Shown here piece by piece: positions 863 to 63,144 of a stretch of 64,000 nt of DNA. The position numbers and the translations under genes were made by a program. The first letter of the stretch is position 1; every line of letters starts with the position of its first letter. The notes under the pieces are model-generated. The model was not told where the DNA came from. It saw only the letters and a program-made list of their open reading frames with translations, and did no database searches. The stretch is taken from positions 310,001 through 374,000 of the IMG/VR virus record IMGVR_UViG_3300030673_000004; one strand, given 5' to 3'.

Positions 863-887
863 CATAAGCACAAAAATAAACTATATT
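859..887 (+). promoter_or_regulatory. Sigma70-type promoter TTGACA-N17-TATATT
   Basis: TTGACA 859-864, 17-nt spacer taagcacaaaaataaac, TATATT 882-887. Same hexamers and the same ACAAAAwTAA spacer core as the promoters at 61658-61686 and 62621-62649. Confidence 0.8.
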
Positions 888-923
888 GTATCAACCTGCC
901 TATTTTAGGACGGTTGACCATCC

Positions 924-950
924 AAGGGCACCGAAAGGTGCCTTTTTGTT
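924..950 (+). terminator. Intrinsic terminator in the leader of the GGCT-domain gene
   Basis: Stem aagggcacc / ggtgccttt with a GAAA tetraloop, followed by ttgtt. It lies between the 859 promoter and the RBS/ATG at 961. Confidence 0.75.
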
Positions 951-960
951 GAAAGGATTT

Positions 961-45104: not shown

Positions 45105-45144
45105 ATAAAAAGAGGACCCAGGGCATGCACACCCGAGGTCCTCT
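45103..45144 (-). terminator. Intrinsic terminator on the minus strand (ends the small RNA)
   Basis: Minus strand reads AGAGGACC-ucGGG-loop-CCCu-gGGUCCUCU-UUUUAUUU. The U-tract exists only on the minus strand. Confidence 0.75.
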
Positions 45145-45261
45145 CCCGGTAGTCAAAAGCTCTTCAGGAGCTTAGTGTCACCTCAACTAACTGTTGAGCT
45201 GATGACTACAGGCTACGTTTCGAGCCGAAGCCCGTAAGGATGTCTCTGAAGAACCGTCCTC
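45105..45261 (-). ncRNA. Novel structured small RNA (~157 nt)
   Basis: Bounded by a near-consensus promoter and a terminator, with no ORF. Three-way junction: closing stem 45149-55/45203-09, hairpins 45157-73 and 45182-98. Additional hairpin 45211-26 and a 7-bp long-range pairing 45161-67/45246-52. Confidence 0.75.
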
Positions 45262-45267
45262 AATCAA

Positions 45268-45296
45268 AATATAACATACTACCTAGTGATTGTCAA
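45268..45296 (-). promoter_or_regulatory. Sigma70 promoter TTGACA-N17-TATATT with extended -10 TG
   Basis: Minus strand reads TTGACA atcactaggtagtatgt TATATT. Predicted start is the G at ~45261. Confidence 0.8.
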
Positions 45297-45346
45297 GGTC
45301 TAATAACTTCTTCGTAGAAGATATTGGCAAAAGGTACCTATTACTC

Positions 45347-47584
45347 ATGGCTAACACATCTAGAACTCGTCCAGACTTTAGCAATGCCTTGATGGCACCG
45401 GACATGCTAGCAACAGCCTTTGATACGGCTGATAATGATCTAAAGAATGTTCTCCAAGCTGTCACAGCTAATACGGGAACAGGTATCGTTTCAACCATCG
45501 ACCCAACAGCAGAGAACTCTCCCCTATGGGTTTTGGCAGTAACAGATAAAACGATGTACTGGGATGTGTACCCAGGAACAGCCGTTACAGCCTCGGGGAA
45601 ATTTCTAACAACTACAAGCACAACACGAGTTCCCCTAGTGGATATAAGTGACGGTGCCGAGAATTTGATCATAATAAAAGCTGTTACAACACCATTAGAA
45701 CACTATGTACTTAATAGTGTAGGTGATGTTGTAGATGCCGGTGACATGGAGTCATGTGAGATTGGCTGCATGACGTACAGCGAATATCTAAATCTGCAAG
45801 CAACGGCTACGACAGATACATATGATACGCTAAACATAGACGACATTGTTGTTCTTGGGGTTGTAGCATGGGATGCATCTGCCGGGCCAACGTTATACAC
45901 AGCAGCAACAACACGCTACTCTTGGCTGCGCCCATGGTTCACAGCCGTGGATGTAGAACATCGCTCCAAAATTGGTACGGGGACAGTATCAGATACTAAC
46001 CCGCATGGACAAAGCTTAGCAGATCTACAGATAGGTGGTACAACCATCTATGAACATCTGACCAGCTCAGGTATGATCTACAGCAAAGACTACAGCACTA
46101 TTGGCATACCCGGTGTTTATTGCTATCAGAGATTTCTTTCAGATGCCATACAATTAGATACTACAGGCGAAGTAACAAGCGACTCCCCCTATGGTGGGTT
46201 GAATGCACAATATGTAGTACTGTCTAATTTCCCAAACACAATCACGTCCGTTCGCAAGGTAAGCAGTAAGCGTGAGATGTGCGGTGGCATGGTCCCACGA
46301 AGCAACATTTTTGTTTTCTCCCGGCAGGAAACCATAGATGATACCATAGATATTTGGTACTTCAAAACAGATAGCTTAACCGTATCTTCTGTTGCATCCA
46401 CGTCACTCACACTGACAACAATGCAAAACAGTGATTTGGCTATTACAGGTGGACAAGCGTTATCCTCTGTAGGGAACACGACATTACAATTCCGTAGATA
46501 TGGAAGTATTCCACGGTCACTAACAGCTTTAATCTCAACAACAGGAAAGCTGTTCCCAGACCCTTACGTTCTTGTGCAGAGTACTCTCGTAACGGATGTA
46601 TCAGGGGACAGTCAAACAAATGAGATTGAACTATATGCACCGGCCCTACTAGGTGTCGGCGTAAGTTCTTTTGCAGCCACACAGAGTGCCTATCTAGCTG
46701 TTCGACTCTACGGTACGGATACAAATGGGGCTGCTATCAAAGAAACTCTAGAGTTCAAAGGCTCTGCCGTTACTGAAGCACCTGTTGGATCAACAGTTGA
46801 AAGCGCCACACAAGTTCTGTTCACACAACAGACATTCTACTCCCTCGTATCTTGGGAAGTCATTACAACAGCATCAATGGCACCAGCAAACCTAAATTTT
46901 GGTTGCGCTATCACGATTTATGCGAAAACAGATCTTGCCAGTTCTAAGCTAGCATCGGCAGTATCCGCTCACTGGACAGGCAGTTCTATCATAAATGCAC
47001 GAGACTCCCGCCGAATCTTACCTATAGTAACGGACGGCGAATACGGGTTAACACCGATAACGCAGGCGGCTGAGAGCATAGGTTTAGCTAGCCAGATAAA
47101 CTCCGTTACATTAGGTAGAGTGCCCGCACAACTTATATGCGCCGAAGACTTCAGACAGCCTAAATACATCAACATAACTAAATGTGCTTGGCGTGGAAAT
47201 AAGCTCCAATCTCCTAGCATAACAAGCATTCACGCCACATCTACAAATGTTGTAGAGTGCTATAAATCTCGGTTCATACCGACACTCATGAGTGAAACAT
47301 ACACATTTCAAGTATGTGTTGTTTTATTCGGCAATGATGTTCTAGCTGATACAGGAAGCGTTCGCTGCATTATTCGTGATTGGTCTGATGTAGAATATGA
47401 GACGATACTAAAACCCTATAGCGGTGATGCTAACAAGCGTACATATCTCTGCTACTCCACTATACCAGCACGGGCAGTAGCTTTCACTATTTCAGGCACA
47501 GCTAATGGATTTGCTGCATATCTAATGCAAAACTCTAATCCAGATGCTGCCTACTACACCACATTGACACTAACAGGTATCTAA
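45347..47584 (+). CDS. Virion structural protein; fused equivalent of 23776..26367 plus the N-terminus of 26364..27218
   Basis: Start moved to ATG 45347 (SD AAGGT), because the TTG at 45290 overlaps the antisense -35 box. Paralogy blocks as listed for 23776..26367. Confidence 0.7.
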   Translation: MANTSRTRPDFSNALMAPDMLATAFDTADNDLKNVLQAVTANTGTGIVSTIDPTAENSPLWVLAVTDKTMYWDVYPGTAVTASGKFLTTTSTTRVPLVDISDGAENLIIIKAVTTPLEHYVLNSVGDVVDAGDMESCEIGCMTYSEYLNLQATATTDTYDTLNIDDIVVLGVVAWDASAGPTLYTAATTRYSWLRPWFTAVDVEHRSKIGTGTVSDTNPHGQSLADLQIGGTTIYEHLTSSGMIYSKDYSTIGIPGVYCYQRFLSDAIQLDTTGEVTSDSPYGGLNAQYVVLSNFPNTITSVRKVSSKREMCGGMVPRSNIFVFSRQETIDDTIDIWYFKTDSLTVSSVASTSLTLTTMQNSDLAITGGQALSSVGNTTLQFRRYGSIPRSLTALISTTGKLFPDPYVLVQSTLVTDVSGDSQTNEIELYAPALLGVGVSSFAATQSAYLAVRLYGTDTNGAAIKETLEFKGSAVTEAPVGSTVESATQVLFTQQTFYSLVSWEVITTASMAPANLNFGCAITIYAKTDLASSKLASAVSAHWTGSSIINARDSRRILPIVTDGEYGLTPITQAAESIGLASQINSVTLGRVPAQLICAEDFRQPKYINITKCAWRGNKLQSPSITSIHATSTNVVECYKSRFIPTLMSETYTFQVCVVLFGNDVLADTGSVRCIIRDWSDVEYETILKPYSGDANKRTYLCYSTIPARAVAFTISGTANGFAAYLMQNSNPDAAYYTTLTLTGI

Positions 47585-47586
47585 CA

Positions 47587-48465
47587 ATGGTTAATGCATT
47601 CTTCTTGGCAGGACTAAGTAAGCTACACTACACAGTAATGAATAAAGTAATTGCTGCTGGAAAAACACCAGGATTGTTATCAGATAATGTCTCTTTAACC
47701 ATATCAAATGATATACTAACTGTCGGTGCTCATGAAGTTTTATTCCCCTGTGGATTATATGCCAACATAGATGCATCTTACGACATAGCTCTGTCGGAAT
47801 ACAGTTTAGCTAAGTCAGCGACGAAATCATCTTGGACTATTTATTGGTTAGCGGATTCAAATCTAGTATCATCACCGCAAATAGCCCTAAAGCGTGGTAT
47901 CATTACACAGGACGCAGCTACTGATTATCAGTGTGTCATTGGTTGGTTGATCTACCCAGGAAATAACATAGACCTAAGCAACTCTGTTACTGTTGCAACA
48001 ATAAAAGAAGAAAAGACATTACTCAAAACGTGTCGTCCTTATATAGATCTAGTTCATACATCTATACCACCAAGCATAACAGCATCTGAAGTTGTTAATG
48101 ATTATACAACAGCTATTAAGTTAGTAAATAGCTCAGCGTCCTCTATCACCGTGGAGCTAACAGCCTACGGTCTAACAGATGATCAGGTACCAGGTGAGCT
48201 TATCTTCAGATCAGCCACATCCGATTCTGGATTCACACTCTCTGCTGAGATAGCAACATCAGCAGGTACCGGCATTTCTGCAGGCAATACAGCAACACTT
48301 GCGTCCGGAAGCAGCATAGTAAAGTTTCCTTTAGCATATCAGCAAGAATACTTTACTACTTGGTCACCATTTGCAATAAACCTCTATGTAAAGATCCCAG
48401 CACTGGGAACTATTAGTATCAATAGCTTAATTGTAACAAATAGCCCACGTTTATCCGTAGGCTAA
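47587..48465 (+). CDS. Hypothetical, probably virion protein
   Basis: Beta-rich and closely spaced after the previous gene. Confidence 0.6.
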   Translation: MVNAFFLAGLSKLHYTVMNKVIAAGKTPGLLSDNVSLTISNDILTVGAHEVLFPCGLYANIDASYDIALSEYSLAKSATKSSWTIYWLADSNLVSSPQIALKRGIITQDAATDYQCVIGWLIYPGNNIDLSNSVTVATIKEEKTLLKTCRPYIDLVHTSIPPSITASEVVNDYTTAIKLVNSSASSITVELTAYGLTDDQVPGELIFRSATSDSGFTLSAEIATSAGTGISAGNTATLASGSSIVKFPLAYQQEYFTTWSPFAINLYVKIPALGTISINSLIVTNSPRLSVG

Positions 48466-48491
48466 TCACCATTTACAGATAGAGGCACATC

Positions 48492-49040
48492 ATGGTTGAC
48501 AACGACTTTATTACTGGACGCTACTCAATTGTTAAATTCAGGTTAAATCCTGATCGTCGTAGTCATAACCGGCTAATTACCTCTACCCTCGGTAAGTATG
48601 GCGTTGTGAATAGTGACTGGGCCAATGAGCAAGCCGACAATGAGACCAGAGCACCTAGCCCCAATGAATTTTGGCTGGTTCGATGCGATGGTGAAATCAA
48701 AGCTAGGTGCCGTGAGGGTCTGTTGATCTTGTCACCGATTCAGTATATACCACGTAAATACGTGCTAACACTACTTGATGGCATGTTCACTGAGTTCACC
48801 GAGTCAGGCGTCCGATACATCGAACCCAAGTGGAAGGATCGCTACTGGATTCTACCGCTAGAATACCGCAGACAAATACCCAAGGAGGAAGCTCATGCTG
48901 TTATCGTGCTCAACTATCCGCATGCCATCGGCCCTGTAGGAGAAGACTACCCAGAAGATGCACAAGAGCTAGTTCAGAAGCCAGATGCTATCTGGAGTCA
49001 GGCTCAGATCATAACAACACCTGAAAATACTGAGGCATAA
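48492..49040 (+). CDS. Hypothetical protein
   Basis: SD AGAGG upstream. No motif recognised. Confidence 0.7.
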   Translation: MVDNDFITGRYSIVKFRLNPDRRSHNRLITSTLGKYGVVNSDWANEQADNETRAPSPNEFWLVRCDGEIKARCREGLLILSPIQYIPRKYVLTLLDGMFTEFTESGVRYIEPKWKDRYWILPLEYRRQIPKEEAHAVIVLNYPHAIGPVGEDYPEDAQELVQKPDAIWSQAQIITTPENTEA

Positions 49041-49044
49041 GTCC

Positions 49045-49449
49045 ATGCCTGCTGTAGATCTCTTTCCAGACATCAAGTCAGTTAAAGCACTCCAGCAGGC
49101 ATTGTTCTCATACCCACCGAATGAGATTGAAAAGTACGACTTAGCATCTAGACAGCTCATCTTAAGCACTTTGATTGCAAAAGCAGAAGCTGTCTCACAT
49201 AAACTACCAGACTACTATTATAGCACGCATACGCATCCTGAATTGATTGATGCGTACCAAGCCAAAATAGGTTATGTGCCCATGTCACTGCTCGATCAAG
49301 TAAATGAAGCCTGGGCTGGTAACTTTGAAACACTTGAACAATACTACGAATTCATCTCTGTGTACAAAAAAGCAAATATCCAAAGTTCGTACATAGCGCC
49401 ACAGCAAGATGCACAAGAGGCTGCTGTCGTAGATCCGGTACAGTACTAA
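49045..49449 (+). CDS. Hypothetical protein
   Basis: TAATG-coupled to the helicase gene. Confidence 0.7.
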   Translation: MPAVDLFPDIKSVKALQQALFSYPPNEIEKYDLASRQLILSTLIAKAEAVSHKLPDYYYSTHTHPELIDAYQAKIGYVPMSLLDQVNEAWAGNFETLEQYYEFISVYKKANIQSSYIAPQQDAQEAAVVDPVQY

Positions 49450-52400
49450 TGCCACGTACATCTAAATTTGATAAATACACGCAGGGCCGTCTACGCATCC
49501 TACAAAATGCAGATTTGGATGAACGAGAAGCCCTGCAAAGAACAGTTGATCTAGTAAACGCTAGGTACAATAAAGCTATTCTGCTTGCTCGTGGCATGGC
49601 AGAGAGACAAGAGAGTGCCTTCAGAGGACAAGCGGAATTGCATGGTGGGATTGTTGCACAACTAGCAGCACATACCAGTATGATGCCACCGAGCAACTTG
49701 GAAGGAACTAGTTGGGTATCACGAGGTAAAGGACAAGGTGCTGCGCCTAGTCATCCCTCAAGAGCTAATGAAGCAGCACAAGAAGCTGCAGAGACACCGC
49801 CGAGTACTCCAGCAGAAGCTACATCAGCACTTACACCGATAGTAGCTACAGAGATCGCCACAGATCCAATATCACTATCAGATGATACTGATGACAGTTA
49901 CACGTCACCACAACCGGAACGCCGTCGTAAAGGCTTTACAGCTACTGAGATGCATGCTGTTCATGACGCTACAACAGAGCCTGGCACGGCAGGCATGTCT
50001 TCTGAACTACTCGCATCAACACCCTTGAATAATATCCTAGGTGATCCTGGTGAAAAGTTCGTTGCTCTTGGCTTTCAAGCCGGTAGAGCACCGTACTTCG
50101 GTGGCTATGGACCGGGCACAGGTGATCAGCTAGGATTCTACATAGGAAACCAGTTCACAGATGGAAACTCTACTGTAACAGGTATCACAGAAGAAGATAG
50201 ACAAGCACTAAAATTCGTAATACGAAAAATAGTTGGCGCAGGCTGCATCCGTATTGACGGTCTAACACAGCATCTGTTACCAAACAACATAGTTCAGCAA
50301 GCCCGCGATCTTGAGGCAGATAGAACCGTTACATGGGTACTTCCACTAAGTATCTATGGTACTGTACATGACGGGGCAGGATACGCTGCTGGTATTTATG
50401 TTGGATGCTACACTAAACTAATTGGAACACAACAAACACATACCTTTGAAACACAGTGGATTATTGGTTTCTGGGGTGCTGTTGGGATGTCTGCCCAAGA
50501 AATTGATGTAGCAAGCATGAAGCAGTTCGATCTATCATCTGATAGTATCCTCACTGCAATTGGCTATTCTTGTTTGAGGAACCTAATTAATCACCAAAAT
50601 CCTACAATAGAATTACGCGAGTTATCCTTACGAACAGGTATTCATGACGCATCTCATCCAAATGAGATGATCAAGACACCTACCGGAAACTTCATTGTAG
50701 TCAAAAGCACTGATCGTAGAAATGAATTTCCTGGGTATGCAACTACAGGTGTTCTCCCTGATGACTTAAAGGATGTACCACAGCCTACACGAACAAACAT
50801 GCGAGGACGCATTGTCTTTGTAGACTGGTCACGCAAGATGATCCACTACTATACAGAGAGTGGAAAACTACATGTAAAGCTATTTGGTACTGGAACAGAA
50901 GTCAGCAACTACGACTACGAACAACTGTACCAACACCCAGTAAGATTATTCAAGAGTGATATTGAAGCAGCTATTCAGCTTGTTTCCGATCTACGCAGAT
51001 TAGGTAAGCCAGTACCACCAGAAGCACGAACGGCCTTCCTAAACCACCCATGGGATGAACACCTTGATGGATTCACTTCTGCAATCCATGGTGGAGGTCT
51101 TACACCTAGAACACAGTACGATGAATTAGCTGCAGAGCTCGCACCGCTAGCGGAAGACCCCGTACTCTGTCTTACGTTAGAAAACCTTGTAGCCAGTTAC
51201 AAAGGTGATCAAACTCTCTACAATTTAGCTCAGAGCTACTATGATGTAGTCTCCTTTGATATGGCGCATGCCCTTGTAAATGGTTACTCGTTCACAGGTA
51301 CTAATAGCGATACAGCATCATTTGATGATGTAGCAGATCCACGCTCAAATGAACAACGCATGCGCACGCCTTTACTAGGTGTACTTTTACATCTAGTAAA
51401 CAAGCCGAGCTTGCCTACAATGGAACAAGTTCAACAGCGCTTCAAAGAAGAGCACGAGCGTATGCAGAACCCTGACATGAATTTCATTATTCATGGTATA
51501 GGTAAGTATTTGAACCAAGCGGGCATTGCCGAGATATATAAACTCAAGCCTCACCAGGTCCGTGTCTTAGGCATGCTTCTACCACTTGATAAAGGTATCA
51601 TTGACGTAGATATGGGTGGTGGAAAGTCTATCATCGCGATCCTTAAGATCATCAGCATGATAGAAAAACTGAAGGCTGAAGGAAAGAGACCACGACCTGT
51701 CGTAGTTGTACCAAATGCCCTGGTACCAACATTCTATCGTGAAATCAAAAAATTCACACGCACAGATCCATCAGACGCATCGTCGGCTACAACACTGAAT
51801 GTAGTCACACTGCAGAATAGCTCAACGTTGAAGCGCATGAACCGCGATGCTATGATCGCAGCAGCACAGCATGCCCCAGATAATACCATATTCATTGCTT
51901 CCTACTCCTGGCTAGCTGGTGACCGCACATCTATCCACACAGGTGAATACATCACAGGAGCTCGTGGAAAGAAAGAACCTAGAGTAGAATATAGATTCAA
52001 TAGAGTAGAAGACTTGCTTGATCGTATCGGCATCAACATAGTATTCTTAGACGAGTGTCATAAGATCAAAGCCAATGGTCGTATGAATGGTGACTTTATT
52101 CATAAAGCTGCCATGGCACTCTCTAGAGCCCCGCATAGATTTGAAATGACAGGCACATTCATATCCAGAACACCTTTTGATATCTTCAACCAAGTCAAAT
52201 TTATTGATCCAACTATTCTAGGATCCCTTCAGCAGTTCAAGGATGAGTTCACAGAGAATGATGGTCGCACCTGGGATAGCGATAGTCTAAAAAGACTCAG
52301 AAGCCATCTGATCAACCGAGGTATCATCACAGTCAGACGTGAAGAGTGGTTGTACCTCATGCCTGAAAAGCGTGAGCACTTCCATTTTGTAGACTTCCAG

Positions 52401-55064: not shown

Positions 55065-55079
55065 CATAGGAGGTTCTTC

Positions 55080-55514
55080 TTGAAGCCTGTCGGTATAACT
55101 GCCAAGATCATTCCAGATAAACGCACCAACCGATTCGCCCAAGAAATCTTTAATAAACAAATAGAACTAACTCCTATCCATGTTTCGTCTATTAGACAGA
55201 ACGATCTTTTGGAATTAGCAGTAGATCATTGGTTAGATTATAGAGCTACTTTACCAAAAGAACATCGAGAGCAGTGGAGTATTCAATCTGAATTTCAACA
55301 AAGAATACAGGTTAATTACTTACGCCACTGTAAGTCTAATTATGACAAGCTACGATATACTTTTGCAAATAAGCAATTACGTAAAGTAACTGTCAGAACA
55401 TTACATAGGATACTTAAAGAAACTGTATTAAAGAAAATTGAACAGCAGTACCCGGAACTACGTGAAGAAGTTCATAGACAGCTTGTAGAAAATAAGAAAA
55501 AGAATAAACGATAA
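55080..55514 (+). CDS. Hypothetical protein (NYLRH..S.YD motif, weak DUF2293-like resemblance)
   Basis: TTG start with a strong SD AGGAGG at 55068-55073. Confidence 0.65.
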   Translation: MKPVGITAKIIPDKRTNRFAQEIFNKQIELTPIHVSSIRQNDLLELAVDHWLDYRATLPKEHREQWSIQSEFQQRIQVNYLRHCKSNYDKLRYTFANKQLRKVTVRTLHRILKETVLKKIEQQYPELREEVHRQLVENKKKNKR

Positions 55515-55588
55515 GCACAACTTCTCTATGGCGAAAGCCTTTACTTAACCGTACTTAACGACTTCACAGCAAAATCAAGGACTTAACC

Positions 55589-56428
55589 ATGGCTACTCGT
55601 AAGAAAACCGCAGCTACTACTGTTGCCGTAGATACTGAAACATCAGTTATCGCAGCAGAACCTAAAGTAAGAAAAGCAGCACCGCGTGCTCGCGTATCTC
55701 GTGCCGAGAAGAAGCGTGCTGAATTCAGTGACAAGATCGAAGCTCGCAATCTCGCTATTGACTTCTTAGAACAGAATCCATCAAGCTTGTCTTTTGACTT
55801 CCTTGTCGAGAATCAACTTCCGATGTATGTCAAGAACAATCTGAAGGTACCGGGCAAGATTGTATTCACTATTAAGAACAGCGATGGCAAGTATGTCAAG
55901 CTTGAAATTGCAAACTGTTCTATTCCACAGCGTTTGGATGACTTACTCACCTGGGGTGCTTTGGCTAACGCCCACTCGCTGAAGGACTCCCTACGTCAAG
56001 GTATCATCCTACTGTGTTCGCCTAAGGATGCAGAGCGTGAACTTCAGTCCGACTACGCAAAGCGCAAGACGGCAGAACTTAATCGTTCTAAGTTTGCCAA
56101 CTTAGGTGGTAGCTTTAACAGCATGATGGAGACAAACATATCAGGTGCTCAAGGCATTGATGATGCTCTGTCCACATATGCCATCAAGAAGATGGATGTT
56201 ACTGCCGTTAATGCAAGCACAGCTACAAATAAGATGGAAGCTATTGTCAATCGCTTCTTGGATGGATCCCATACTGAAGAAGATACCATCACGGAAGTCT
56301 TGGATAATTCGCGTATCTTTGCCCCCTCGGACTGGCATCTCCTAATCAGCAAGGTTCAGGGCAAGTCTCAGAGCTTGGTGAACTTGGCGAAACAGCAACT
56401 CACTGTTGCCAGCAGCATCAACAGCTAA
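55589..56428 (+). CDS. Hypothetical protein with a basic N-terminus
   Basis: SD AAGGA. Followed by a terminator. Confidence 0.75.
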   Translation: MATRKKTAATTVAVDTETSVIAAEPKVRKAAPRARVSRAEKKRAEFSDKIEARNLAIDFLEQNPSSLSFDFLVENQLPMYVKNNLKVPGKIVFTIKNSDGKYVKLEIANCSIPQRLDDLLTWGALANAHSLKDSLRQGIILLCSPKDAERELQSDYAKRKTAELNRSKFANLGGSFNSMMETNISGAQGIDDALSTYAIKKMDVTAVNASTATNKMEAIVNRFLDGSHTEEDTITEVLDNSRIFAPSDWHLLISKVQGKSQSLVNLAKQQLTVASSINS

Positions 56429-56460
56429 GATAACCAGACTTAACTTAACTAAACACGACT

Positions 56461-56496
56461 AGTGGCAAGAGTACCCCGCTCTTGCCACTTCTTTTT
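56461..56496 (+). terminator. Intrinsic terminator
   Basis: 11-bp stem agtggcaagag / ctcttgccact followed by tcttttt. Confidence 0.8.
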
Positions 56497-56505
56497 AGGT
56501 AAACT

Positions 56506-57477
56506 ATGGGACTACTAAACTACAACACATACTTTGATGATACATCATTATCAAACAGCACAGCAGTCCTAGGCGAACGCTATGATGGCTGGGTCATCAC
56601 GTGTGAATTATGGGAATCCTTAGGCATTGGCATCGTATTACCGATTAACCCAGAACACTTGAATATCAATATACCTATCCGAGGCCACGCATATGAAGCA
56701 GCTTTTGGAAAAGCTATAGCTTACAGTTTGAATAAACGACGTAATACATATTATGATCCGTTTAACTTACAACTAACATTCAATACCGGATACATTATAC
56801 CTAAATGGTCTACTTCAGCAGTAGCTGTTCAAGAAACAGCGTCATCCTCGTCCACGCTAAATAAAGATGGCACGATAACACAAACTAAAAGTCAATCTGT
56901 TTGGGAAGCTACAGCAAACAAAAGAGTAGTACCCCAGAGTTCAGCACAAAACGTTACCAATAGTGCTTATGCTGCAAGTCGCCAAAACGATATAATGACA
57001 TATTTCACAGGCATAAACTCTAAGACACGGGTGACGCCTAAAGATCTAGGTGTGCCCTTAGATTTGTATGATACGTATGTTCCGATTGGAACTCAGAATC
57101 TCTATGCTTTAATGTCTCTGCTAGATGGAGCTAAAACGTGGCGACCTAATTTGGATTATACTGAAGAATTCGCTATGGCAGCACCAAACAGGATTAAAGT
57201 ATATGCTAATAGCTTAGTGTTTCCAGCCATGACTTTCTACTGCCAAGCACAGGAACAAGGTATAAGCTGGGCAGAATCCGCTGAGACGCCAACATGTTTT
57301 GATGTAACTCTAAATCTACTCTGCACCCTAACTGATCCTCAAATCGGACGAGGTCAATTAGACTCACTGATCAGTCAGTATAAAAAGAACTTTACAATTG
57401 GTACTCTTGCTAGGTTCTCAGCTAAGAACAAGACAAGTACCGGAAGTGGAACAATAGCTGATGGCACAGAGTTCTAG
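56506..57477 (+). CDS. Putative tail tube-initiator/baseplate hub protein, paralog of the next gene
   Basis: WVITC..W..LG..IVLPINP and NRI...AN...FP are shared with 57461..59008. The LPINP motif is typical of tube-like baseplate proteins. Confidence 0.45.
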   Translation: MGLLNYNTYFDDTSLSNSTAVLGERYDGWVITCELWESLGIGIVLPINPEHLNINIPIRGHAYEAAFGKAIAYSLNKRRNTYYDPFNLQLTFNTGYIIPKWSTSAVAVQETASSSSTLNKDGTITQTKSQSVWEATANKRVVPQSSAQNVTNSAYAASRQNDIMTYFTGINSKTRVTPKDLGVPLDLYDTYVPIGTQNLYALMSLLDGAKTWRPNLDYTEEFAMAAPNRIKVYANSLVFPAMTFYCQAQEQGISWAESAETPTCFDVTLNLLCTLTDPQIGRGQLDSLISQYKKNFTIGTLARFSAKNKTSTGSGTIADGTEF

Positions 57478-59008
57478 TACAAATTCAGATAAAATTGATG
57501 TAGCACAATCAATAACAAGCTCAAACAACTTTGAAACTAGATATAATCCTTGGGTTATAACATGCTCCCGCTGGCATGACCTAGGTTTCTATATTGTATT
57601 ACCCATCAACCCCGCAGATATATCATGGAATATACCGTTAAAGATCGCCACAGAACAAACAAAGCATACAACCGTATCGTATATATGGCGTAACAACTAT
57701 ATAAATGTATCAAGCGATGGTAGTATGCTCTCAGAAGAATCACTGCTACAAGACTTTAATATAACTCTAGCGTTTAACTCCGCAGATATCGCACCAAGAG
57801 TCACAGCAGACACGATTAAAGGATGGAAAAACGGAACAGACCCGAATGCAGCTAATAACTATGTAATTGACCCAGACAGCAAAGCAAGTGATCTTATTAC
57901 ATTTAATAAGTATGGTGCTATGGACAATCCTGTTGCAGCACTGCAAGCTAATCATTGGGATTCTCTTGGGTACGCATCAGACTATGATCTAACAGCGCCC
58001 TTGGGCATTCAGAATTTCTATAGGTTTCTATCACTATTAGATGAACCTAAAACATATGTAGCTAGGAATGACAACCCAAAAACATATCAAAATGCAATAC
58101 CTACAAGAACTAACAGAATAACACTTGTAGCTAATACACCAGCATTTCCAACACTATTACTCTATGGTAGTATTGAGCCCTCGGGTGTATCATGGGAAGA
58201 AAGTGTTGAGCATCCAAACTCCTTTGATGTAACCTTCACAATGGTTGTCACAGAAGTAGCACCTCGCATGGGTGTACGCAAATTCTCAGATATGCTAGCA
58301 TCCTACAAGACAGCAGCTAATACAACATGGGATACACGTAATCAGTTAGAACAAGCTTATTACAACGGCCTAATCAAAGTCAGCCTCACAGCAGTTACAG
58401 ATGACACAACAGGAAAGACAACAGATTTGTCTACACCGTCAGCTACAGCAGGTAATGGGGCTACAGGAACAGCCGTAGCACAAACAGAAGCTGACCAAGC
58501 CACAGCAGAGGCAGCCAGTGCTGACGGTACAGAAGACGCAGCCACAGAAACAACGGAGCCAGATCTCACAAAATTCGACACATCGGGCATGACAGCAGCA
58601 GAATTAGCAGATTTGAAGAACGCAGTAGCTACAGGAGCTACTCCAACAACAGAAGCAGCACAAACAGCAATGGCTGAAGAAAATATAGCAGTAGCTAAAA
58701 CAGCAACAGCAGATGCCCTAGGGACTGATCTACTAACTACAGATACCGCCTATACTAAAGCGCAGCAAGCTAAAAACAATAGCTACACTACGGCACAACT
58801 CATGCAAATTGCATCCTACGCAACTGTATCAGGAACTGCTCTTCAAAACCAAGTAGCTCTTGCACTCGCTGAAAACCCGAATTTAACCAATAGCCAAAAA
58901 ATATCAGCTATATCAAATATTAGAAACACCATAAAATCGAGTAATACAACACAAACAGCATCAGCTAAGATCCCCGGTGCTACTCGTAAAGGATCTAAAT
59001 CATCATAG
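57461..59008 (+). CDS. Putative tail tube-initiator/baseplate hub protein with an Ala/Thr-rich C-terminal extension
   Basis: Paralog of 56506..57477 over ~300 aa. Confidence 0.45.
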   Translation: MAQSSSTNSDKIDVAQSITSSNNFETRYNPWVITCSRWHDLGFYIVLPINPADISWNIPLKIATEQTKHTTVSYIWRNNYINVSSDGSMLSEESLLQDFNITLAFNSADIAPRVTADTIKGWKNGTDPNAANNYVIDPDSKASDLITFNKYGAMDNPVAALQANHWDSLGYASDYDLTAPLGIQNFYRFLSLLDEPKTYVARNDNPKTYQNAIPTRTNRITLVANTPAFPTLLLYGSIEPSGVSWEESVEHPNSFDVTFTMVVTEVAPRMGVRKFSDMLASYKTAANTTWDTRNQLEQAYYNGLIKVSLTAVTDDTTGKTTDLSTPSATAGNGATGTAVAQTEADQATAEAASADGTEDAATETTEPDLTKFDTSGMTAAELADLKNAVATGATPTTEAAQTAMAEENIAVAKTATADALGTDLLTTDTAYTKAQQAKNNSYTTAQLMQIASYATVSGTALQNQVALALAENPNLTNSQKISAISNIRNTIKSSNTTQTASAKIPGATRKGSKSS

Positions 59009-59084
59009 TGGGCCAGGTGGGGGTCGAACCCACATGTTACCATTACCATTTCAGCGACGTATAAGATCGAGTGGATACTGGCCT
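59009..59084 (-). tRNA. Atypical tRNA-like RNA (anticodon loop CU-UAU-AC, Ile-UAU-like) lacking a D-arm
   Basis: Acceptor AGGCCAG/CUGGCCC, T-arm GUGGG-UUCGACC-CCCAC, 4-bp anticodon stem. Only 7 nt lie between the acceptor and anticodon arms, the variable region is 20 nt, and the 3' end reads A-CUA rather than A-CCA. Confidence 0.5.
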
Positions 59085-59091
59085 ACTCAGG

Positions 59092-59120
59092 AATTTACAC
59101 GAATATCGACGCAGATTCAA
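59092..59120 (-). promoter_or_regulatory. Sigma70-like promoter TTGAAT-N17-TAAATT for the tRNA-like element
   Basis: Minus strand reads TTGAAT ctgcgtcgatattcgtg TAAATT, ending 8 nt upstream of the tRNA-like 5' end. Confidence 0.55.
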
Positions 59121-59134
59121 GGTAAATTTCTTCT

Positions 59135-60187
59135 ATGCCTGAAGATCCTCTAGACCAAGTCTTTGACCAGCTACGAGCACAGAGTCAAAAGACTAAATAC
59201 GTAAAGAGCTACTCGGAAAACGATGTACACGATATGCTCATGCTGCTACACCAGCATGGACTTACACACGAGTTCCGCACAGATGTTCAAGAAATCCGGT
59301 GCCCCTGCCCTTTCCACAAAAACCACGGCAGTCCTACTTTATGGATTAACTTTGGGACAGCGGAAGATCTACCATTCGGTGCGTTCAAATGCTTCAGTTG
59401 TGGTCAGTCCGGATTATGGAGTAAACTAGAACGTAAGATCACGGGCCAGAACTCCATAGGCACAACAAGTGTCTATGATGAAGCCGAGATGCTACCCAGC
59501 ATCCAACTACACAAAACTAAAGACATCTATAGACCACCACCAATCCTATTTGACCTAGAGGATGGTTTTGTATGGGAACACCCAGATGGAGATTTCTCGG
59601 GAGAGTTCTTATCAGGATTAGGATCAAAATTAGCTATGCGCACATGGGTTGAGCGATCCGTCCGACAACAGTTCTCAGAGCTCCGTCTATGGCTCCCTGT
59701 GTTTGATGGTGAGATGCTAGAGGGAGACATCATGGCAGCCTTAGAGAGGCCCGCAGAAGATGCAGAGGAGTTCATTAAAAAGGGATTCAAAAAGTATATA
59801 AATTCAGCGTCCCTAGAGGCCAAAGATACTTTGTGGCCTATGAGGGAAGTAGTTCGGCGCTTCGGAACTAGTTATGTTGTTCTCGTAGAGGGTCCAGCAG
59901 ACGCTTTACGTTTGATATTAAATGGAGTTCCTGCCCTAGCATGTTTAGGCACAGGCACGTGGTCTAAGTCAAAAGCGGAGCGCGTCTACTACGTCTTCGA
60001 TAAAATCATAACATGTTTTGATGGTGATGACGCAGGACGAACTCTAACAAAAACAGTGATTCAATCTCTATATAGTAGATTAGAAGAAAAGCTAATTCCA
60101 GTGTGGCTCCCTGATTCATTTGATCCAGGTAAATTCACATCGCAAGACTGCTCTTGGTTAGCTAAAAAAGCACAATTAACGACTTAA
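59135..60187 (+). CDS. DNA primase (CHC2 zinc finger + TOPRIM, DnaG-like)
   Basis: Zinc finger CPCPFH...FKCFSCG; TOPRIM VLVEGPADAL and CFDGDDAG. Confidence 0.9.
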   Translation: MPEDPLDQVFDQLRAQSQKTKYVKSYSENDVHDMLMLLHQHGLTHEFRTDVQEIRCPCPFHKNHGSPTLWINFGTAEDLPFGAFKCFSCGQSGLWSKLERKITGQNSIGTTSVYDEAEMLPSIQLHKTKDIYRPPPILFDLEDGFVWEHPDGDFSGEFLSGLGSKLAMRTWVERSVRQQFSELRLWLPVFDGEMLEGDIMAALERPAEDAEEFIKKGFKKYINSASLEAKDTLWPMREVVRRFGTSYVVLVEGPADALRLILNGVPALACLGTGTWSKSKAERVYYVFDKIITCFDGDDAGRTLTKTVIQSLYSRLEEKLIPVWLPDSFDPGKFTSQDCSWLAKKAQLTT

Positions 60188-60198
60188 AGGATAGAATC

Positions 60199-60360
60199 AT
60201 GGATCAGTTTAATGAAGTAGTAGGACAACCACTTGACTCTAAAGTTGTGATTGATCCTGAAGATATTGCCCGAAGACTACGCCAGGGTGCCCTTGAGAAC
60301 GAAGCAACGGCATCAACCATCATCTATGGTGATCCTGCTGAAGAAGAGAAAGCTATCTAG
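60199..60360 (+). CDS. Small acidic hypothetical protein (53 aa, not in the ORF track)
   Basis: SD AAGGA, ATG 60199, MDQFNEVVGQPLDSK...EEEKAI-stop. It fills the gap between the primase and the next gene. Confidence 0.6.
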   Translation: MDQFNEVVGQPLDSKVVIDPEDIARRLRQGALENEATASTIIYGDPAEEEKAI

Positions 60361-60375
60361 TCTAAGGAATTGAGC

Positions 60376-60597
60376 ATGAATGCTATAAAACAAATGCTCA
60401 CAGATCCGGACAACATAACCCATAATGTCCTCAAACATGGTGTGTTCTGGGGATTTATTGCTATTATTGGTATGCAAGTCTATTCTATCACACAAGGACA
60501 AGCATTTAACCCAATTTCTTTTGGGGTAGCTATTGGTGCCATTCTTGGTGGTGGTGGCTTAGGCATAGGTGCAGAGGCTAAAGGTATTCAAAAATAA
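60376..60597 (+). CDS. Small two-TM membrane protein (holin-like)
   Basis: Hydrophobic segments GVFWGFIAIIGMQVYSI and FGVAIGAILGGGGLGIG. SD AAGGA. Confidence 0.55.
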   Translation: MNAIKQMLTDPDNITHNVLKHGVFWGFIAIIGMQVYSITQGQAFNPISFGVAIGAILGGGGLGIGAEAKGIQK

Positions 60598-60671
60598 AAA
60601 GCTGCTCAAACAAAGCATCTGTGGTCGAAATAAACAAAAACCACGTCAGCGCAAGAGAGTTTGAGCAGCTT
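60597..60671 (-). terminator. Long-stem putative terminator at the convergence of the two transcription directions
   Basis: 13-bp inverted repeat aagctgctcaaac / gtttgagcagctt enclosing an internal hairpin. U-rich run on the minus strand. Confidence 0.45.
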
Positions 60672-60737
60672 GCATAGGCATAGATCCAGCAGGTAGCGTT
60701 CCCCAATGGTACCTGCATCTAATGGGATCCATGTATG

Positions 60738-61427
60738 CTAGTCTAGCAGATGCTGAAGATTACGACGCTGGATCTCAGGGATAATCTCCTGCTGAATTTC
60801 CTTCCGTGAGCAACTACGCCTATGAGCTGCGTAAACATTAACAAACTCGCGGTCCCGCCCAGTACGAGAAAAAGCAGAGTCATCAGATGGCAGAAAAGAA
60901 GAACCTGGATTGAAGGAAAGACGAAACCACAAGCCATTGCGCCTTTCCCATGCTTCGGGCAAAGATGCATGTGACCAGTCGGACTTAGGAACAGGAACCA
61001 GCGATATCCGGGACCGAACATCGGAATGATGATTTTCACAGGTGCGCATCTGCAATACACCGAAAGCATCAACATAGAAATCCCGCCGCCAAGGACTATG
61101 TTGGGTACGCTCAACATCGGATACAAACCAGTTCTTGTAAATCCGCTTCGCTTCATCCACCCAACGATCAGACAGCCCCGTGCAAAAGATATGCAGAAAC
61201 TCGGAGTAAACAGCATTCGCAGCATGACCAACATGGGCCACCAGAAACTGCTCCAGCTTGTTGTACAGCGTGACACATGCATCCTCATCCCAGCTATGGC
61301 GAGAAACCTTATGAAGGCTCTCACGCGACGGGAGTTCTTCTAACGTACCCTGATTGCGAAAAGTACGCTTCACCTTAACAGTGTCACGAAATTTCTTATG
61401 AGTTGTTTCAATCCAAGTATGGGACAT
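60738..61427 (-). CDS. Hypothetical protein
   Basis: SD AAAGGA. The pattern ELP.RE...FL...VG....VYSE...FYV...G.L...W...NG.W resembles a conserved hypothetical family (not verified). Confidence 0.7.
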   Translation of the reverse strand: MSHTWIETTHKKFRDTVKVKRTFRNQGTLEELPSRESLHKVSRHSWDEDACVTLYNKLEQFLVAHVGHAANAVYSEFLHIFCTGLSDRWVDEAKRIYKNWFVSDVERTQHSPWRRDFYVDAFGVLQMRTCENHHSDVRSRISLVPVPKSDWSHASLPEAWERRNGLWFRLSFNPGSSFLPSDDSAFSRTGRDREFVNVYAAHRRSCSRKEIQQEIIPEIQRRNLQHLLD

Positions 61428-61442
61428 GGAAATTCCTTTTAT

Positions 61443-61625
61443 TTAGATATCGAAATTAAATTCAGACCTAAGCAAATCAAATGAATTAACAATATCATCC
61501 ATCCCGCACTCCCCGGTATAAATCTCCAAAGAAGCCCCATGATCAGCCAAGAACTGCTTGAAATCCTTGAAATCCTTTCGGAAATCTTCCTGTTCTTGAA
61601 GAATCTGTTTCTGATTCGTAGCCAT
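61443..61625 (-). CDS. Small acidic early-type protein (60 aa)
   Basis: Start moved to ATG 61625 (SD AAGGAG at 61634-61639), immediately downstream of a promoter. Confidence 0.7.
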   Translation of the reverse strand: MATNQKQILQEQEDFRKDFKDFKQFLADHGASLEIYTGECGMDDIVNSFDLLRSEFNFDI

Positions 61626-61639
61626 TAGAGTAACTCCTT

Positions 61640-61686
61640 GTTGAGGTGACAAGAACAAATATACATTAATTTTGTACTCTTGTCAA
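61640..61686 (-). promoter_or_regulatory. Early-type sigma70 promoter TTGACA-N17-TATATT with a conserved leader box
   Basis: -35 at 61681-86 and -10 at 61658-63. 37 bp (61640-61676) are identical to 62603-62639. 8-bp inverted repeat TGACAAGA/TCTTGTCA. Confidence 0.85.
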
Positions 61687-61692
61687 GGACAA

Positions 61693-61980
61693 TTAATAAC
61701 CGAGTTCTTCATTGGCAATAGCCAACTGCGCAGCTAGATGAGCCGACTTATATCCGTCAGCCAGCTTCACCAACTTACAGTGTGTTCCATCACGGAATAC
61801 AGTATGTTCACGCACGCCACTAACGACAACGCCATCGACAGGATGAACAGGATCAACAAGAACAAAGCCTGGCGTTTCCTTACTGTATCCGGACACGTCT
61901 GTAAGGATCTTGGACACTACACCAAGACGGCCATAGCACTCGGACCAAACCAAGTCACCTTCATTAATTTGTGCTAACAT
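61693..61980 (-). CDS. Hypothetical protein
   Basis: SD AAAGGA upstream. Confidence 0.65.
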   Translation of the reverse strand: MLAQINEGDLVWSECYGRLGVVSKILTDVSGYSKETPGFVLVDPVHPVDGVVVSGVREHTVFRDGTHCKLVKLADGYKSAHLAAQLAIANEELGY

Positions 61981-62006
61981 GATGTTCCTTTCTATTTAGC
62001 TTAAGA

Positions 62007-62588
62007 TTAAGCAGCCTTAGACACCGAAGAGCAACGCTTGTCCAAATTGCGGATGTACACCTCAATCATAGCAAGAAACTCTCGGCTGTAAATAGAATCA
62101 AATTCCAAGTGAAATGCCTCAATAGCACGCTCAAACAACTCACGATACTTATTAGCGGACATTCCCGCATACTTAGCCAGGTTACCAACCTGACCAACAA
62201 AATAGTTGCTCATACCATACTCACCAACAAGAATATTCGTGCTGAAATCACCCAAGTCACAATCTAAAGGATTGCGCTTCTGAGAGGCGTGCTGTACAAA
62301 AATGTCACGATCAGAACCCTGGGCATACACAGAAGCCACAGAATGTAAGTCAATCTGACAGTCAACACTACGACCCTCAGCATCAACCAAAAGCAGCATT
62401 GAGCTGATACGAGGTTCGGCCTTAATCACAGAAACGCGAGTCAGATCAAAGTAGATGCCGCCGTGCATATGGTTAATGTGAGACATCTTTACAAAGATAT
62501 GCTTATCGCCTGTAAGGCTCTCCCCATCACGAGTGCTCAAGGCGAAAATGTTCTTGCGATCCGTAGCAAAAAGAGTTCCTGCCTTCAT
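62007..62588 (-). CDS. Hypothetical early-type protein
   Basis: SD GUAAGGA directly after the 62621-62649 promoter. Confidence 0.7.
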   Translation of the reverse strand: MKAGTLFATDRKNIFALSTRDGESLTGDKHIFVKMSHINHMHGGIYFDLTRVSVIKAEPRISSMLLLVDAEGRSVDCQIDLHSVASVYAQGSDRDIFVQHASQKRNPLDCDLGDFSTNILVGEYGMSNYFVGQVGNLAKYAGMSANKYRELFERAIEAFHLEFDSIYSREFLAMIEVYIRNLDKRCSSVSKAA

Positions 62589-62602
62589 TAATGATCCTTA
62601 CT

Positions 62603-62649
62603 GTTGAGGTGACAAGAACAAATATACATTAATTTTGTATGCTTGTCAA
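62603..62649 (-). promoter_or_regulatory. Early-type sigma70 promoter TTGACA-N17-TATATT with a conserved leader box
   Basis: -35 at 62644-49 and -10 at 62621-26. Near-identical to 61640-61686. Confidence 0.85.
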
Positions 62650-62664
62650 CAAGAAGATTCTAAA

Positions 62665-63144
62665 TTAAAACTTAGGTACCTTCTCAGCTAAATTGGAATT
62701 ATAGTAACGAGGATCTCCTGTCACCTCAGCACCTAGCCATGTGGGGATATTTACAAACGTATCTGCTGATGGTAGCTCCACTTCGGCAAGGACCAAACCA
62801 GCGAGATGCCCAAGAAACACATCAACTTCAAACAAATGTCCCTTATATTTAATACCATACCTATCTTTAATTATCAATCCGGAACAGTACCCGTTAAGCA
62901 TCTCCTGAGCGTCCCCCAAAGGGATCTCATACTCAAATTCGTGCCCAGACATACCGTCGAGCTTGGGTCCTTTAAGCGTGATATAAGCATGAGCTGTACT
63001 ATCAGCTAACTGGATAGTCCGAATACGTATAGTCATCTTATCAGAACTGCGATAAATGTATGCCTGTGTAATCCTCTCAGGTACGCAGTGAGACAGTACC
63101 TGGGTGTCTCCCATTAAGAACTTGCGCTCTGTTTCAATAGCCAT
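62665..63144 (-). CDS. CYTH-domain triphosphate tunnel metalloenzyme
   Basis: Motifs MAIETERKFL (ExExK), IRIR, TLKG, EFEYEIP, K.RY, FEVDVF, LAEVE and W.G.EVT.DPRY.N. Start at ATG 63144 (ATGA overlap). Confidence 0.9.
   Translation of the reverse strand: MAIETERKFLMGDTQVLSHCVPERITQAYIYRSSDKMTIRIRTIQLADSTAHAYITLKGPKLDGMSGHEFEYEIPLGDAQEMLNGYCSGLIIKDRYGIKYKGHLFEVDVFLGHLAGLVLAEVELPSADTFVNIPTWLGAEVTGDPRYYNSNLAEKVPKF

What the first reader, a model, noticed from the sequence alone, without database searches (positions are those of the whole stretch)
45176..62614. The small RNA is complementary to the 5' leaders and SD of the early-type transcripts: candidate trans-acting antisense switch
Seen: the sRNA contains GUUGAGGUGACA (45187-45176), the exact complement of the 12-nt box UGUCACCUCAAC. 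That box sits at about +1 of both transcripts from the repeated promoters (61651-61640 and 62614-62603), directly abutting their SD. A second sRNA segment, AUCCUUAC (45241-45234), is complementary to GUAAGGAU, the SD of the 62588 gene (UCCUU also matches AAGGA of the 61625 gene). The two segments are in the collinear order needed for a bipartite duplex. A rough chance of a given 12-mer falling in a 160-nt region is ~2e-5 (uniform model, post hoc). Established analogy: P1 C4 and P4 CI RNAs are structured RNAs using two short elements to silence phage leaders. Inference: RNA-based shut-off of early genes. Alternatives: a shared protein-binding DNA box; ribosome sponging, since GAGGUGA is itself a 16S-complementary sequence; or pairing with the open-complex non-template strand. 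The GUUGAG part is sequestered in a hairpin and would need to open.
Basis: partly seen in the sequence, partly recalled or inferred. Interest (0 to 1): 0.9.

Follow-up and report, generated by a model that had tools for sequence, protein, structure and literature searches.

The report
Phage small RNA matching early-gene leaders
A 375-kb tailed phage encodes a real, structured small RNA of about 155 bases whose conserved top loop is complementary to the first 11-12 bases shared by many of the phage's early messages, so it may control them as a group; only sequence evidence supports this so far.

Summary
The core observation holds. GUUGAGGUGACA (45187-45176, minus strand) is the exact complement of the box TGTCACCTCAAC at 61651-61640 and 62614-62603.

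The RNA gene itself is well supported. It has a TTGACA-17-TATATT promoter, an intrinsic terminator and helices that covary in three phage lineages.

The box is not special to two promoters. It is the 5'-terminal leader of a promoter-leader-SD cassette found at least 9 times exactly, plus variants, in the 134 kb I could read of this 375-kb phage. Relatives carry it too.

Three things favour RNA-RNA pairing:
- The complementarity ends at the inferred transcription start.
- The box lies in the longest conserved block of an otherwise 53%-identical RNA.
- It sits at the apex of a covariation-supported hairpin (loop GUGACR).

Lineages without the RNA have no cassette where I could look.

The second "anti-SD" segment is one arm of an internal helix and is not conserved. 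The sequestering hairpin is not conserved. A 12-mer match is common genome-wide.

No sRNA-leader covariation could be tested, because the box never varies. Verdict: a plausible trans-antisense regulator of an early regulon (confidence about 0.45), a new variant of phage antisense control.

The parts
45268..45296 (-). sRNA promoter: -35 TTGACA (45296-45291), 17-nt spacer, TG-extended -10 TATATT (45273-45268)
   Evidence: 11/12 match. Both hexamers are kept in L008 and L043 although the L043 spacer is different.
45106..45261 (-). Small RNA transcript, about 155 nt. The inferred start is G45261, 7 nt after the -10, and it ends in the U-run after the terminator. It is non-coding.
   Evidence: Fold z = -4.2. 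No ORF of note. No Rfam family. Homologues in L008/L009/L010 and L013/L043/L044.
45233..45260 (-). Helix 1 of the sRNA.
   Evidence: A compensatory change occurs within the helix in L008. There is no covariation with the SD.
45221..45234 (-). Small hairpin CGGGC-UUCG-GCUCG, followed by the conserved single-stranded GAAAC/GGAAC..GCCUG
   Evidence: The stem is replaced by CGGUACA/UGUAUCG in L008. It contains a G.U pair that fits only the minus strand.
45149..45209 (-). Long irregular hairpin that carries the box at its apex
   Evidence: 17 of 17 pairs are kept in 3 lineages, 7 of them through changes on both sides. The slid controls give 22-41% paired.
45176..45187 (-). Anti-leader box GUUGAGGUGACA. 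GUGACA (45181-45176) is the hexaloop. GUU and AG lie in the two weak top helices.
   Evidence: 11 of 12 nt are identical in L043 (A to G at the last position), inside the longest conserved block of the RNA.
45106..45147 (-). Intrinsic terminator: a G+C-rich hairpin plus a U-run. It has no U-run on the + strand.
   Evidence: A terminator of different sequence sits at the same place in L043.
62588..62649 (-). Early cassette 1: -35 at 62649-62644, -10 at 62626-62621, leader box at 62614-62603, SD GUAAGGA, ATG at 62588 (193-aa ORF)
61623..61686 (-). Early cassette 2: -35 at 61686-61681, -10 at 61663-61658, leader box at 61651-61640, SD AAGGAG at 61639-61634, ATG at 61625 (60-aa ORF)

Best explanation
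The window is part of a 375.5-kb tailed phage. Between two baseplate/tail-fibre-module genes, and antisense to them, lies a host-RNA-polymerase-driven gene for a structured RNA. It is about 155 nt here and 175-215 nt in relatives.

The best-conserved part of the RNA is the top of a long hairpin. Its hexaloop GUGACR and the two weak helices below it spell GUUGAGGUGAC. That sequence is the complement of nucleotides +1 to +11 of a leader, 5'-GUCACCUCAAC-A-AGGAG-N5-8-AUG. The phage places this leader behind a repeated early promoter in front of many small early genes.

Proposed mechanism (inferred, not shown):
- The loop nucleates on the unstructured 5' end of these mRNAs, and the duplex zips to 11-12 bp.
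- This makes a blunt 5'-terminal helix that ends one base before the SD.
- My preferred reading is that the helix removes the C/A-rich standby region and hinders 30S binding, so the stable sRNA progressively silences the whole early set once it has accumulated. The duplex is too short for RNase III.
- The opposite sign cannot be excluded: a flush 5' helix could protect the mRNAs from 5'-end-dependent RNases.
For: The RNA gene is real:
- The promoter hexamers are conserved while the spacer diverges.
- A terminator is conserved in place.
- Fold z-scores are -4.2 to -5.1.
- G.U pairs fit only the minus strand.
- The hairpin has 17 of 17 pairs kept and 7 compensatory pairs.

The link to the leaders:
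- The complement is an exact 12-mer, with P about 3e-4 for this pair of features.
- The same promoter core drives leaderless ORFs whose ATG lies 7-8 nt after the -10. That puts the start of box transcripts at the T/G of (T)GTCACC, so the complementarity stops at the transcript's 5' end.
- The only sRNA box change in relatives, A to G, faces that first U and keeps a G.U pair.
- The sRNA is 53% identical between the window and L043, but GUUGAGGUGAC-R-CUAAGCUC is its longest conserved block.
- At least 9 exact and 2 near-exact box leaders occur in the 134 kb held of this phage. Both relatives that have the sRNA also have them (L040; L018 from the same sample as L043).
- Lineages L011, L012/L038 and L194 have only a 40-55-nt spacer where the sRNA gene sits. 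L038 also has a syntenic early region with no cassette.

Energetics:
- The 11-bp duplex is -17.8 kcal/mol and opening the box costs 7.3 kcal/mol.
- Cofolding gives ddG of -10 to -14 kcal/mol with the box paired.
- Box leaders rank 1, 2, 3, 5 and 7 among 203 translation-initiation regions.
Against: - There is no expression or interaction data at all.
- No compensatory covariation between sRNA and leaders could be observed, because the box is invariant in the three lineages.
- The whole cassette from -35 to SD is >=90% conserved. Conservation of the leader box is therefore explained equally well by cassette duplication or homogenisation, and is not independent evidence for an RNA-level role.
- Individual leaders drift, for example GUCACAUCAAC, AUCACUUCAAC and GUCAUCUCAAC.
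- The accessibility-corrected energies (-7 to -11 kcal/mol) barely exceed the best background hits (-8.7, -8.1).
- Chance 12-mers against other parts of the sRNA exist in the genome.
- Only three sRNA lineages are available, and two of them are close to each other.
- The sRNA and the early genes use the same kind of host promoter, so a simple temporal switch needs extra assumptions, such as RNA stability or a protein repressor at the promoter palindrome.
Confidence: 0.45

Rival explanations
1. Cis-antisense or processing element. The RNA acts on the + strand structural-operon transcript that it overlaps, through full-length duplex formation, RNase III cleavage or transcriptional interference. 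It would either keep read-through of the baseplate/tail-fibre module low while host polymerase is active, or uncouple the 173-aa and 745-aa cistrons. On this reading the match to the leaders is incidental.
For: - The gene lies entirely within the 44583-45104 / 45347-47584 intergenic gap, on the opposite strand.
- Its terminator has no U-run on the + strand, so + strand transcripts should read through it.
- Lineages without the RNA have a short hairpin at the same junction, which suggests the junction itself is a processing or termination point.
Against: - The RNA overlaps neither a coding region nor the RBS of the 745-aa gene. Its 5' end is 86 nt upstream of the ATG.
- A pure cis-antisense role does not need covarying helices, or a 20-nt block conserved in an RNA that is otherwise 53% identical.
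Confidence: 0.2
2. A structured RNA with another partner, for example one that binds or decoys a host or phage protein, or engages the ribosome through its SD-like loop GAGGUGA. The leader match would then be chance, helped by both sequences resembling the SD/anti-SD pair.
For: - The leader box contains UCACCUC, the same 7 nt as the usual 16S 3' tail (established knowledge), and the loop contains the perfect SD-like GAGGUGA.
- Other blocks of the RNA are conserved too and have no leader complementarity: the 5' GGACGGUUC, and the GAAAC/GGAAC..GCCUG block.
- Chance 12-mers exist elsewhere in the genome.
Against: - P about 3e-4 that the match falls on the leader.
- The match ends at the inferred transcript start.
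- The RNA and the cassettes co-occur in the same lineages.
- Titrating ribosomes stoichiometrically with an sRNA is implausible.
- No start codon follows the SD-like loop.
Confidence: 0.25
3. A shared DNA site. A phage or host DNA-binding protein recognises the double-stranded box at +1 of the early promoters and also inside the sRNA gene.
For: - The box is part of a promoter cassette that is conserved along its whole length.
- In the window and L008 the sRNA copy has an imperfect inverted partner (TCAGCTCAAC / GTTGAGGTGA).
Against: - The inverted partner is lost in L043 while the box is kept.
- The obvious operator-like palindrome of the cassettes (ATACA..TGTAT in the spacer) is absent from the sRNA gene.
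- A site at +76 inside a 155-nt RNA gene has no evident regulatory logic.
- The match stops at the transcript start although the cassette's conservation continues upstream.
Confidence: 0.07

Closest known systems
P1/P7 C4 antisense RNA acting on the ant leader, and the related P4 CI RNA acting on seqA/seqC (own knowledge; C4 is summarised in PMC12197685)
   Same: A structured phage RNA whose loop sequences pair with the leader or RBS region of phage messages to control early or immunity functions. Recognition depends on presentation in loops.
   Different: - C4 and CI use two loop elements. Here only one element is conserved, and the second was tested and failed.
- C4 and CI are processed from the very transcript they regulate, in temperate phages, and have a single target. 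This RNA has its own promoter and terminator, lies 16-17 kb from the nearest targets in a large apparently lytic phage, and would address 10 or more transcripts.
- No match to any Rfam family in the cmscans.
Lambda OOP and P22 sar cis-antisense RNAs (own knowledge)
   Same: A short RNA from a constitutive promoter with an intrinsic terminator, lying antisense within a phage operon.
   Different: OOP and sar overlap the coding end or RBS of their target. This RNA overlaps only non-coding spacer, and its conserved block matches distant leaders instead.
PeSL regulatory cassettes of T4-type phages (PMC2839356, PMC4122927)
   Same: Many near-identical copies of a strong sigma-70-like early promoter in front of small ORFan genes, and a likely substrate for modular shuffling.
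   Different: - PeSLs pair the promoter with a terminator stem-loop. The two window cassettes show no adjacent stem-loop.
- These cassettes instead carry a fixed 11-nt leader plus SD.
- No PeSL-directed sRNA is described in those papers' abstracts.
Trans-acting phage-encoded sRNAs that target host mRNAs, for example the sRNA reported in bioRxiv 10.1101/2024.10.31.621285
   Same: A phage-encoded, independently transcribed, base-pairing sRNA that is active in the lytic cycle.
   Different: That RNA is reported to act on the host replication machinery. Here the predicted targets are the phage's own early messages, through a shared 5' tag.

Membership tests
Trans-encoded base-pairing sRNA (generic class) | Own promoter and intrinsic terminator delimiting a short non-coding transcript | tested here: met
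   Both elements are conserved in L008 and L043. Transcription itself has not been observed.
Trans-encoded base-pairing sRNA (generic class) | A conserved seed presented in an accessible loop | tested here: met
   The hexaloop GUGACR tops a hairpin with 7 compensatory pairs. Opening the loop costs 3.8 kcal/mol and the whole box 7.3 kcal/mol.
Trans-encoded base-pairing sRNA (generic class) | Complementarity to the target's translation-initiation region beyond chance | tested here: met
   12 nt exact, at -26 to -15 relative to the ATG. P about 3e-4. Energetic separation from background is only modest.
Trans-encoded base-pairing sRNA (generic class) | Compensatory covariation between sRNA seed and targets across relatives | tested here: inconclusive
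   The box is identical in all three lineages. The single A-to-G change keeps a G.U pair with the first U.
Trans-encoded base-pairing sRNA (generic class) | Measured effect on target expression, or a physical sRNA-mRNA duplex | not testable with these tools
   Needs reporter assays, RIL-seq, CLASH or EMSA.
C4/CI-type phage antisense RNA | Sequence and structure match to the curated RNA family | tested here: not met
   No Rfam family reaches its gathering score in the window. At E<=10 in 44900-45500 there are only two spurious snoRNA hits.
C4/CI-type phage antisense RNA | Two loop elements pairing with two sites in the target leader | tested here: not met
   The second element AUCCUUAC lies within helix 1, covaries with its own partner, does not track the SD and is absent in L043. 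Its length is at chance level.
C4/CI-type phage antisense RNA | Encoded upstream in, and processed from, the same transcript as its target | tested here: not met
   It is a separate transcription unit, 16-17 kb from the nearest box leaders and on the other side of the replication genes.
Cis-antisense RNA (OOP/sar type) | Overlaps the coding region or RBS of the gene on the opposite strand | tested here: not met
   The RNA spans 45106-45261. The neighbouring genes end at 45104 and start at 45347.
PeSL-type early regulatory cassette | Strong sigma-70-like early promoter repeated before small ORFs | tested here: met
   30 distinct cassettes in the held sequence, all with the TTGACA/TATATT core.
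PeSL-type early regulatory cassette | Terminator stem-loop joined to the promoter | tested here: not met
   No terminator-like hairpin next to 61686 or 62649.

The most novel reading that the evidence does not exclude
A large lytic phage tags a whole set of early mRNAs (at least 11 found in a third of the genome) with an identical 11-nt 5'-terminal leader. It also encodes one dedicated small RNA whose conserved hairpin loop reads that tag. The result is a single-RNA, regulon-wide post-transcriptional switch for the early programme, acting either as shut-off or as 5'-end protection. This would work alongside a protein operator in the same promoters.
Probability: 0.4. Interest if true: 0.8.

Novelty: new variant of a known kind. 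Interest (0 to 1): 0.6.

Why it matters
Temporal control in large lytic phages is usually ascribed to polymerases, sigma-like factors and repressors. RNA-based control of a phage's own genes is known mainly from single-target immunity circuits of temperate phages such as P1, P7, P4, P22 and lambda.

A stand-alone sRNA addressing a shared 5' tag on many early messages would be a compact, portable way to regulate a whole expression class after transcription. It would also be a natural design for synthetic multi-gene control.

The claim can be tested directly in a heterologous two-plasmid reporter assay, because promoter, leader and sRNA all look like ordinary sigma-70/SD parts. If the match turns out to be coincidental, the finding is still a conserved novel phage non-coding RNA of unknown role, embedded antisense in a structural operon.

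Tried and rejected
Searches that found nothing:
- INPHARED phages, blastn on both regions: no match.
- Rfam, at gathering score and at permissive thresholds: nothing real.
- tRNA/tmRNA scan: none.
- IMG/VR holds only this phage from the family.
- GTDB genomes hold no relative of the 745-aa neighbour.

Searches that gave only chance hits:
- The JGI metagenome scan for the box plus its 3' flank returned the same phage plus 13 chance hits in coding DNA.
- A 17-nt leader pattern gave one chance coding hit in another giant contig.
- I wasted one viral scan on a promoter pattern with the wrong spacer length.

Ideas rejected:
- The bipartite C4-like duplex (see the membership test).
- The CUCAAC/GUUGAG sequestering hairpin.
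- A small ORF in the RNA.
- An RNA anti-CRISPR (repeat mimic). The small hairpin's stem sequence changes between lineages, so it does not copy one fixed repeat (inference only, no host data).
- A remnant of an inverted cassette. There is no similarity to the cassette beyond the 12 nt.

Uninformative:
- Pfam and PHROG gave no function for the flanking genes or the early ORFs, apart from CYTH, Baseplate_J, CHB_HEX_C_1 repeats, an SNF2 helicase and a primase.

Full report
**Where the window comes from.** The 745-aa ORF next to the feature, and the promoter-box 24-mer, both map to IMGVR_UViG_3300030673_000004, a 375,537-bp contig. Window position plus 310,000 gives the contig position. Assemblies of nearly the same length (375.5-375.8 kb) recur in other samples. 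A Baseplate_J protein (5579-6970) and several giant CHB_HEX_C_1/Fn3_assoc-repeat proteins mark the + strand up to about 48 kb as a baseplate/tail-fibre module. An SNF2 helicase and a primase follow. From 60.7 kb onward, small minus-strand ORFs form an early-type region. Nothing similar is in the INPHARED phages, and no Rfam family or tRNA is found.

**Check of the observation.**
- The three best sigma-70-type promoters of the last 20 kb are the two early promoters and the sRNA promoter. All are TTGACA-17-TATATT on the minus strand.
- The second segment and the SD it matches are also there.
- A simulated 155-mer reaches 12 nt of complementarity to the 29-nt leader with P = 3e-4, and 8 nt with P = 0.07.
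- Against the 134 kb of the phage that I could read, four other 12-nt complementarities to other parts of the sRNA occur at arbitrary coding sites. Only the position of this match makes it notable.

**The RNA gene is real.**
- Relatives were reached through the 745-aa neighbour. There is a 92%-identity lineage (L008/L009/L010) and an 85% lineage (L013/L043/L044).
- Both keep, in the same gap and on the same strand, the -35 and -10 hexamers, a structured RNA and a terminator of different sequence. In L043 the promoter spacer is different.
- Fold z-scores are -4.2, -5.1 and -4.95.
- The RNA is only 53% identical between the window and L043, against 66-74% for the flanking genes. Its longest conserved block is GUUGAGGUGAC-R-CUAAGCUC.
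- No ORF is plausible.

**The fold around the box.** That helix is broken in L043. The fold shared by all three lineages is a long irregular hairpin (45209-45149). All 17 of its pairs are kept, 7 of them through changes on both sides, and the slid controls fall to 22-41% paired. At its top, RGUU/AGCU and AG/CU enclose the hexaloop GUGACR. Several G.U pairs would be A-C mismatches on the + strand, which fixes the strand as minus.

**What the box is on the target side.**
- The box is the start of a cassette: TTGACA, a spacer with the palindrome ATACA..TGTAT, TATATT, (T)GTTCTT, GTCACCTCAAC, A, AGGAG, 5-8 nt, then ATG.
- In the parts of this genome that I could fetch there are at least 9 exact and 2 one-mismatch box leaders. 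Across the three lineages there are 30 distinct cassettes with this promoter core. Twenty of these carry a box-like leader and 3 more carry degenerate ones.
- Four cassettes have the same promoter but no leader at all. Their ATG sits 7-8 nt after the -10, and three of them checked open ORFs of 80-385 aa.
- That places the start of box transcripts at the T/G of (T)GTCACC. The complementarity to the sRNA therefore begins at the 5' end of the mRNA and ends one base before the SD.
- The one sRNA box difference in L043, the last A changed to G, faces that first U and keeps a wobble pair.

**Phyletic pattern.**
- The 92% lineage has the sRNA and box leaders (L040).
- The 85% lineage has the sRNA (L043) and box leaders in a contig from the same sample (L018) and in L019 and L045.
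- Three more distant lineages have only 40-55 nt, with a small hairpin, where the sRNA gene sits. These are L011, L012/L038 and L194, with 66-68% (745-aa protein) or 44% (173-aa protein) identity.
- For L038 I could also read the syntenic early region. Its 203-aa protein is 27% identical to the window's 229-aa early protein. The region holds no such cassette.
- The sRNA and the tagged leaders therefore occur together and are absent together, although the number of lineages is small.

**Energetics.**
- The 11-bp duplex is worth -17.8 kcal/mol. Opening the box costs 7.3 kcal/mol and opening the loop alone 3.8 kcal/mol.
- Cofolding sRNA and leader gives -10 to -14 kcal/mol with the box paired, wherever the leader box is intact.
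- In a crude accessibility-corrected ranking of 203 initiation regions, box leaders take ranks 1, 2, 3, 5 and 7. However, the best unrelated hits (-8.7, -8.1) are close to them (-7 to -11).

- The second, anti-SD segment is the 3' arm of helix 1.
- In L008 that arm changes together with its own 5' arm, while the SD of the orthologous gene reads GCAAGGAUU.
- In L043 it is gone.
- The C4/CI-style two-element model is therefore not supported.
- An 11-12-bp duplex is also too short for RNase III (established knowledge), so any effect must be steric or 5'-end related.

**Limits.**
- The whole cassette, not just the box, is at least 90% conserved. This fits duplication or shuffling of a regulatory cassette, as described for the PeSLs of T4-type phages (PMC2839356, PMC4122927). 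Leader conservation alone therefore says nothing about RNA pairing.
- The box never varies where the sRNA exists, so true covariation could not be tested.
- Individual leaders do drift.
- The host is unknown and there are no expression data.

**Verdict.**
- A genuine, novel phage small RNA: about 0.9.
- It pairs with the 5' tag of the early leaders: about 0.45.
- The direction of the effect is open. I prefer shut-off. The palindrome in the early promoters, absent from the sRNA promoter, suggests that a protein turns transcription off while the stable RNA deals with the remaining messages. This is inference.
- Rivals: a cis-antisense or processing role at the structural-operon junction (0.2), another partner with a coincidental match (0.25), and a shared DNA site (0.07).

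Noticed in passing
window 62643-62627 and 61680-61664 (minus strand); all cassettes in L002-L007, L040, L018, L045: The spacer of the early promoters holds a conserved palindrome, ATACA-aaattaa-TGTAT, overlapping the -10. It looks like an operator for a dimeric repressor. The sRNA promoter lacks it.
   Followed up: partly
L004 2402-2445, L007 7649-7605 (minus), L085 12146-12190, L162 (ATGTTTATG copy): The same promoter core drives leaderless genes whose ATG lies 7-8 nt after the -10. The three I checked open ORFs of 105, 385 and 80 aa. The phage therefore uses both leaderless and tagged-leader early messages.
   Followed up: partly
L139 about 10967-10900 and 11907-11800 (minus strand): One early-type promoter is followed at once by a hairpin plus U-run (an attenuator or a tiny RNA) before a 97-aa ORF. 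Another is followed by a leader of about 95 nt with repeated GTGATC motifs. These may be further regulatory RNAs.
   Followed up: no
L014 896-2739 (same phage, upstream part of the early region): A TnpB-like gene (Cas12f1-like_TNB domain) lies next to a serine resolvase gene. This is an IS607-type element inside the phage genome.
   Followed up: no
L040 15150-15090 (minus strand): In the 92% relative, the cassette before the 60-aa gene homologue has a two-mismatch box (TGTCATCTTAAC) and ATA in place of the ATG. This looks like a decaying cassette and gene.
   Followed up: no
window 62719-62730: The minus-strand mRNA of the CYTH-domain gene carries GCUGAGGUGACA about 105 nt upstream of the first leader box. 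Read-through RNA could form a 10-bp long-range stem over that promoter and leader. By length this is at chance level.
   Followed up: partly
window 61650-61644, 62613-62607 and 45183-45177: The leader box contains UCACCUC, identical to 7 nt of the usual 16S rRNA 3' tail. The sRNA loop region contains the matching perfect SD-like GAGGUGA. Whether this resemblance is meaningful is unexplained.
   Followed up: partly
window 56461-56489: A 12-bp G+C-rich hairpin with T-runs on both sides. It looks like a bidirectional terminator between the 279-aa and 323-aa genes.
   Followed up: no
window 3963-5579; L018 3052-5343; L045 7617-9905: Amidoligase_2-domain proteins and a gamma-glutamyl cyclotransferase-like domain (886-3930) are encoded in this phage group. 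In L018/L045 an extra 763-aa amidoligase gene is inserted, in opposite orientation, between two early cassettes.
   Followed up: no
L072 5773-7550 (IMGVR_UViG_3300033142_002332): An unrelated viral contig has four identical copies of a TTGACA-16-TATATT promoter with a conserved A-rich leader, in both orientations within 2 kb. It is another example of a repeated promoter-leader cassette, found by accident with a mis-spaced pattern.
   Followed up: no
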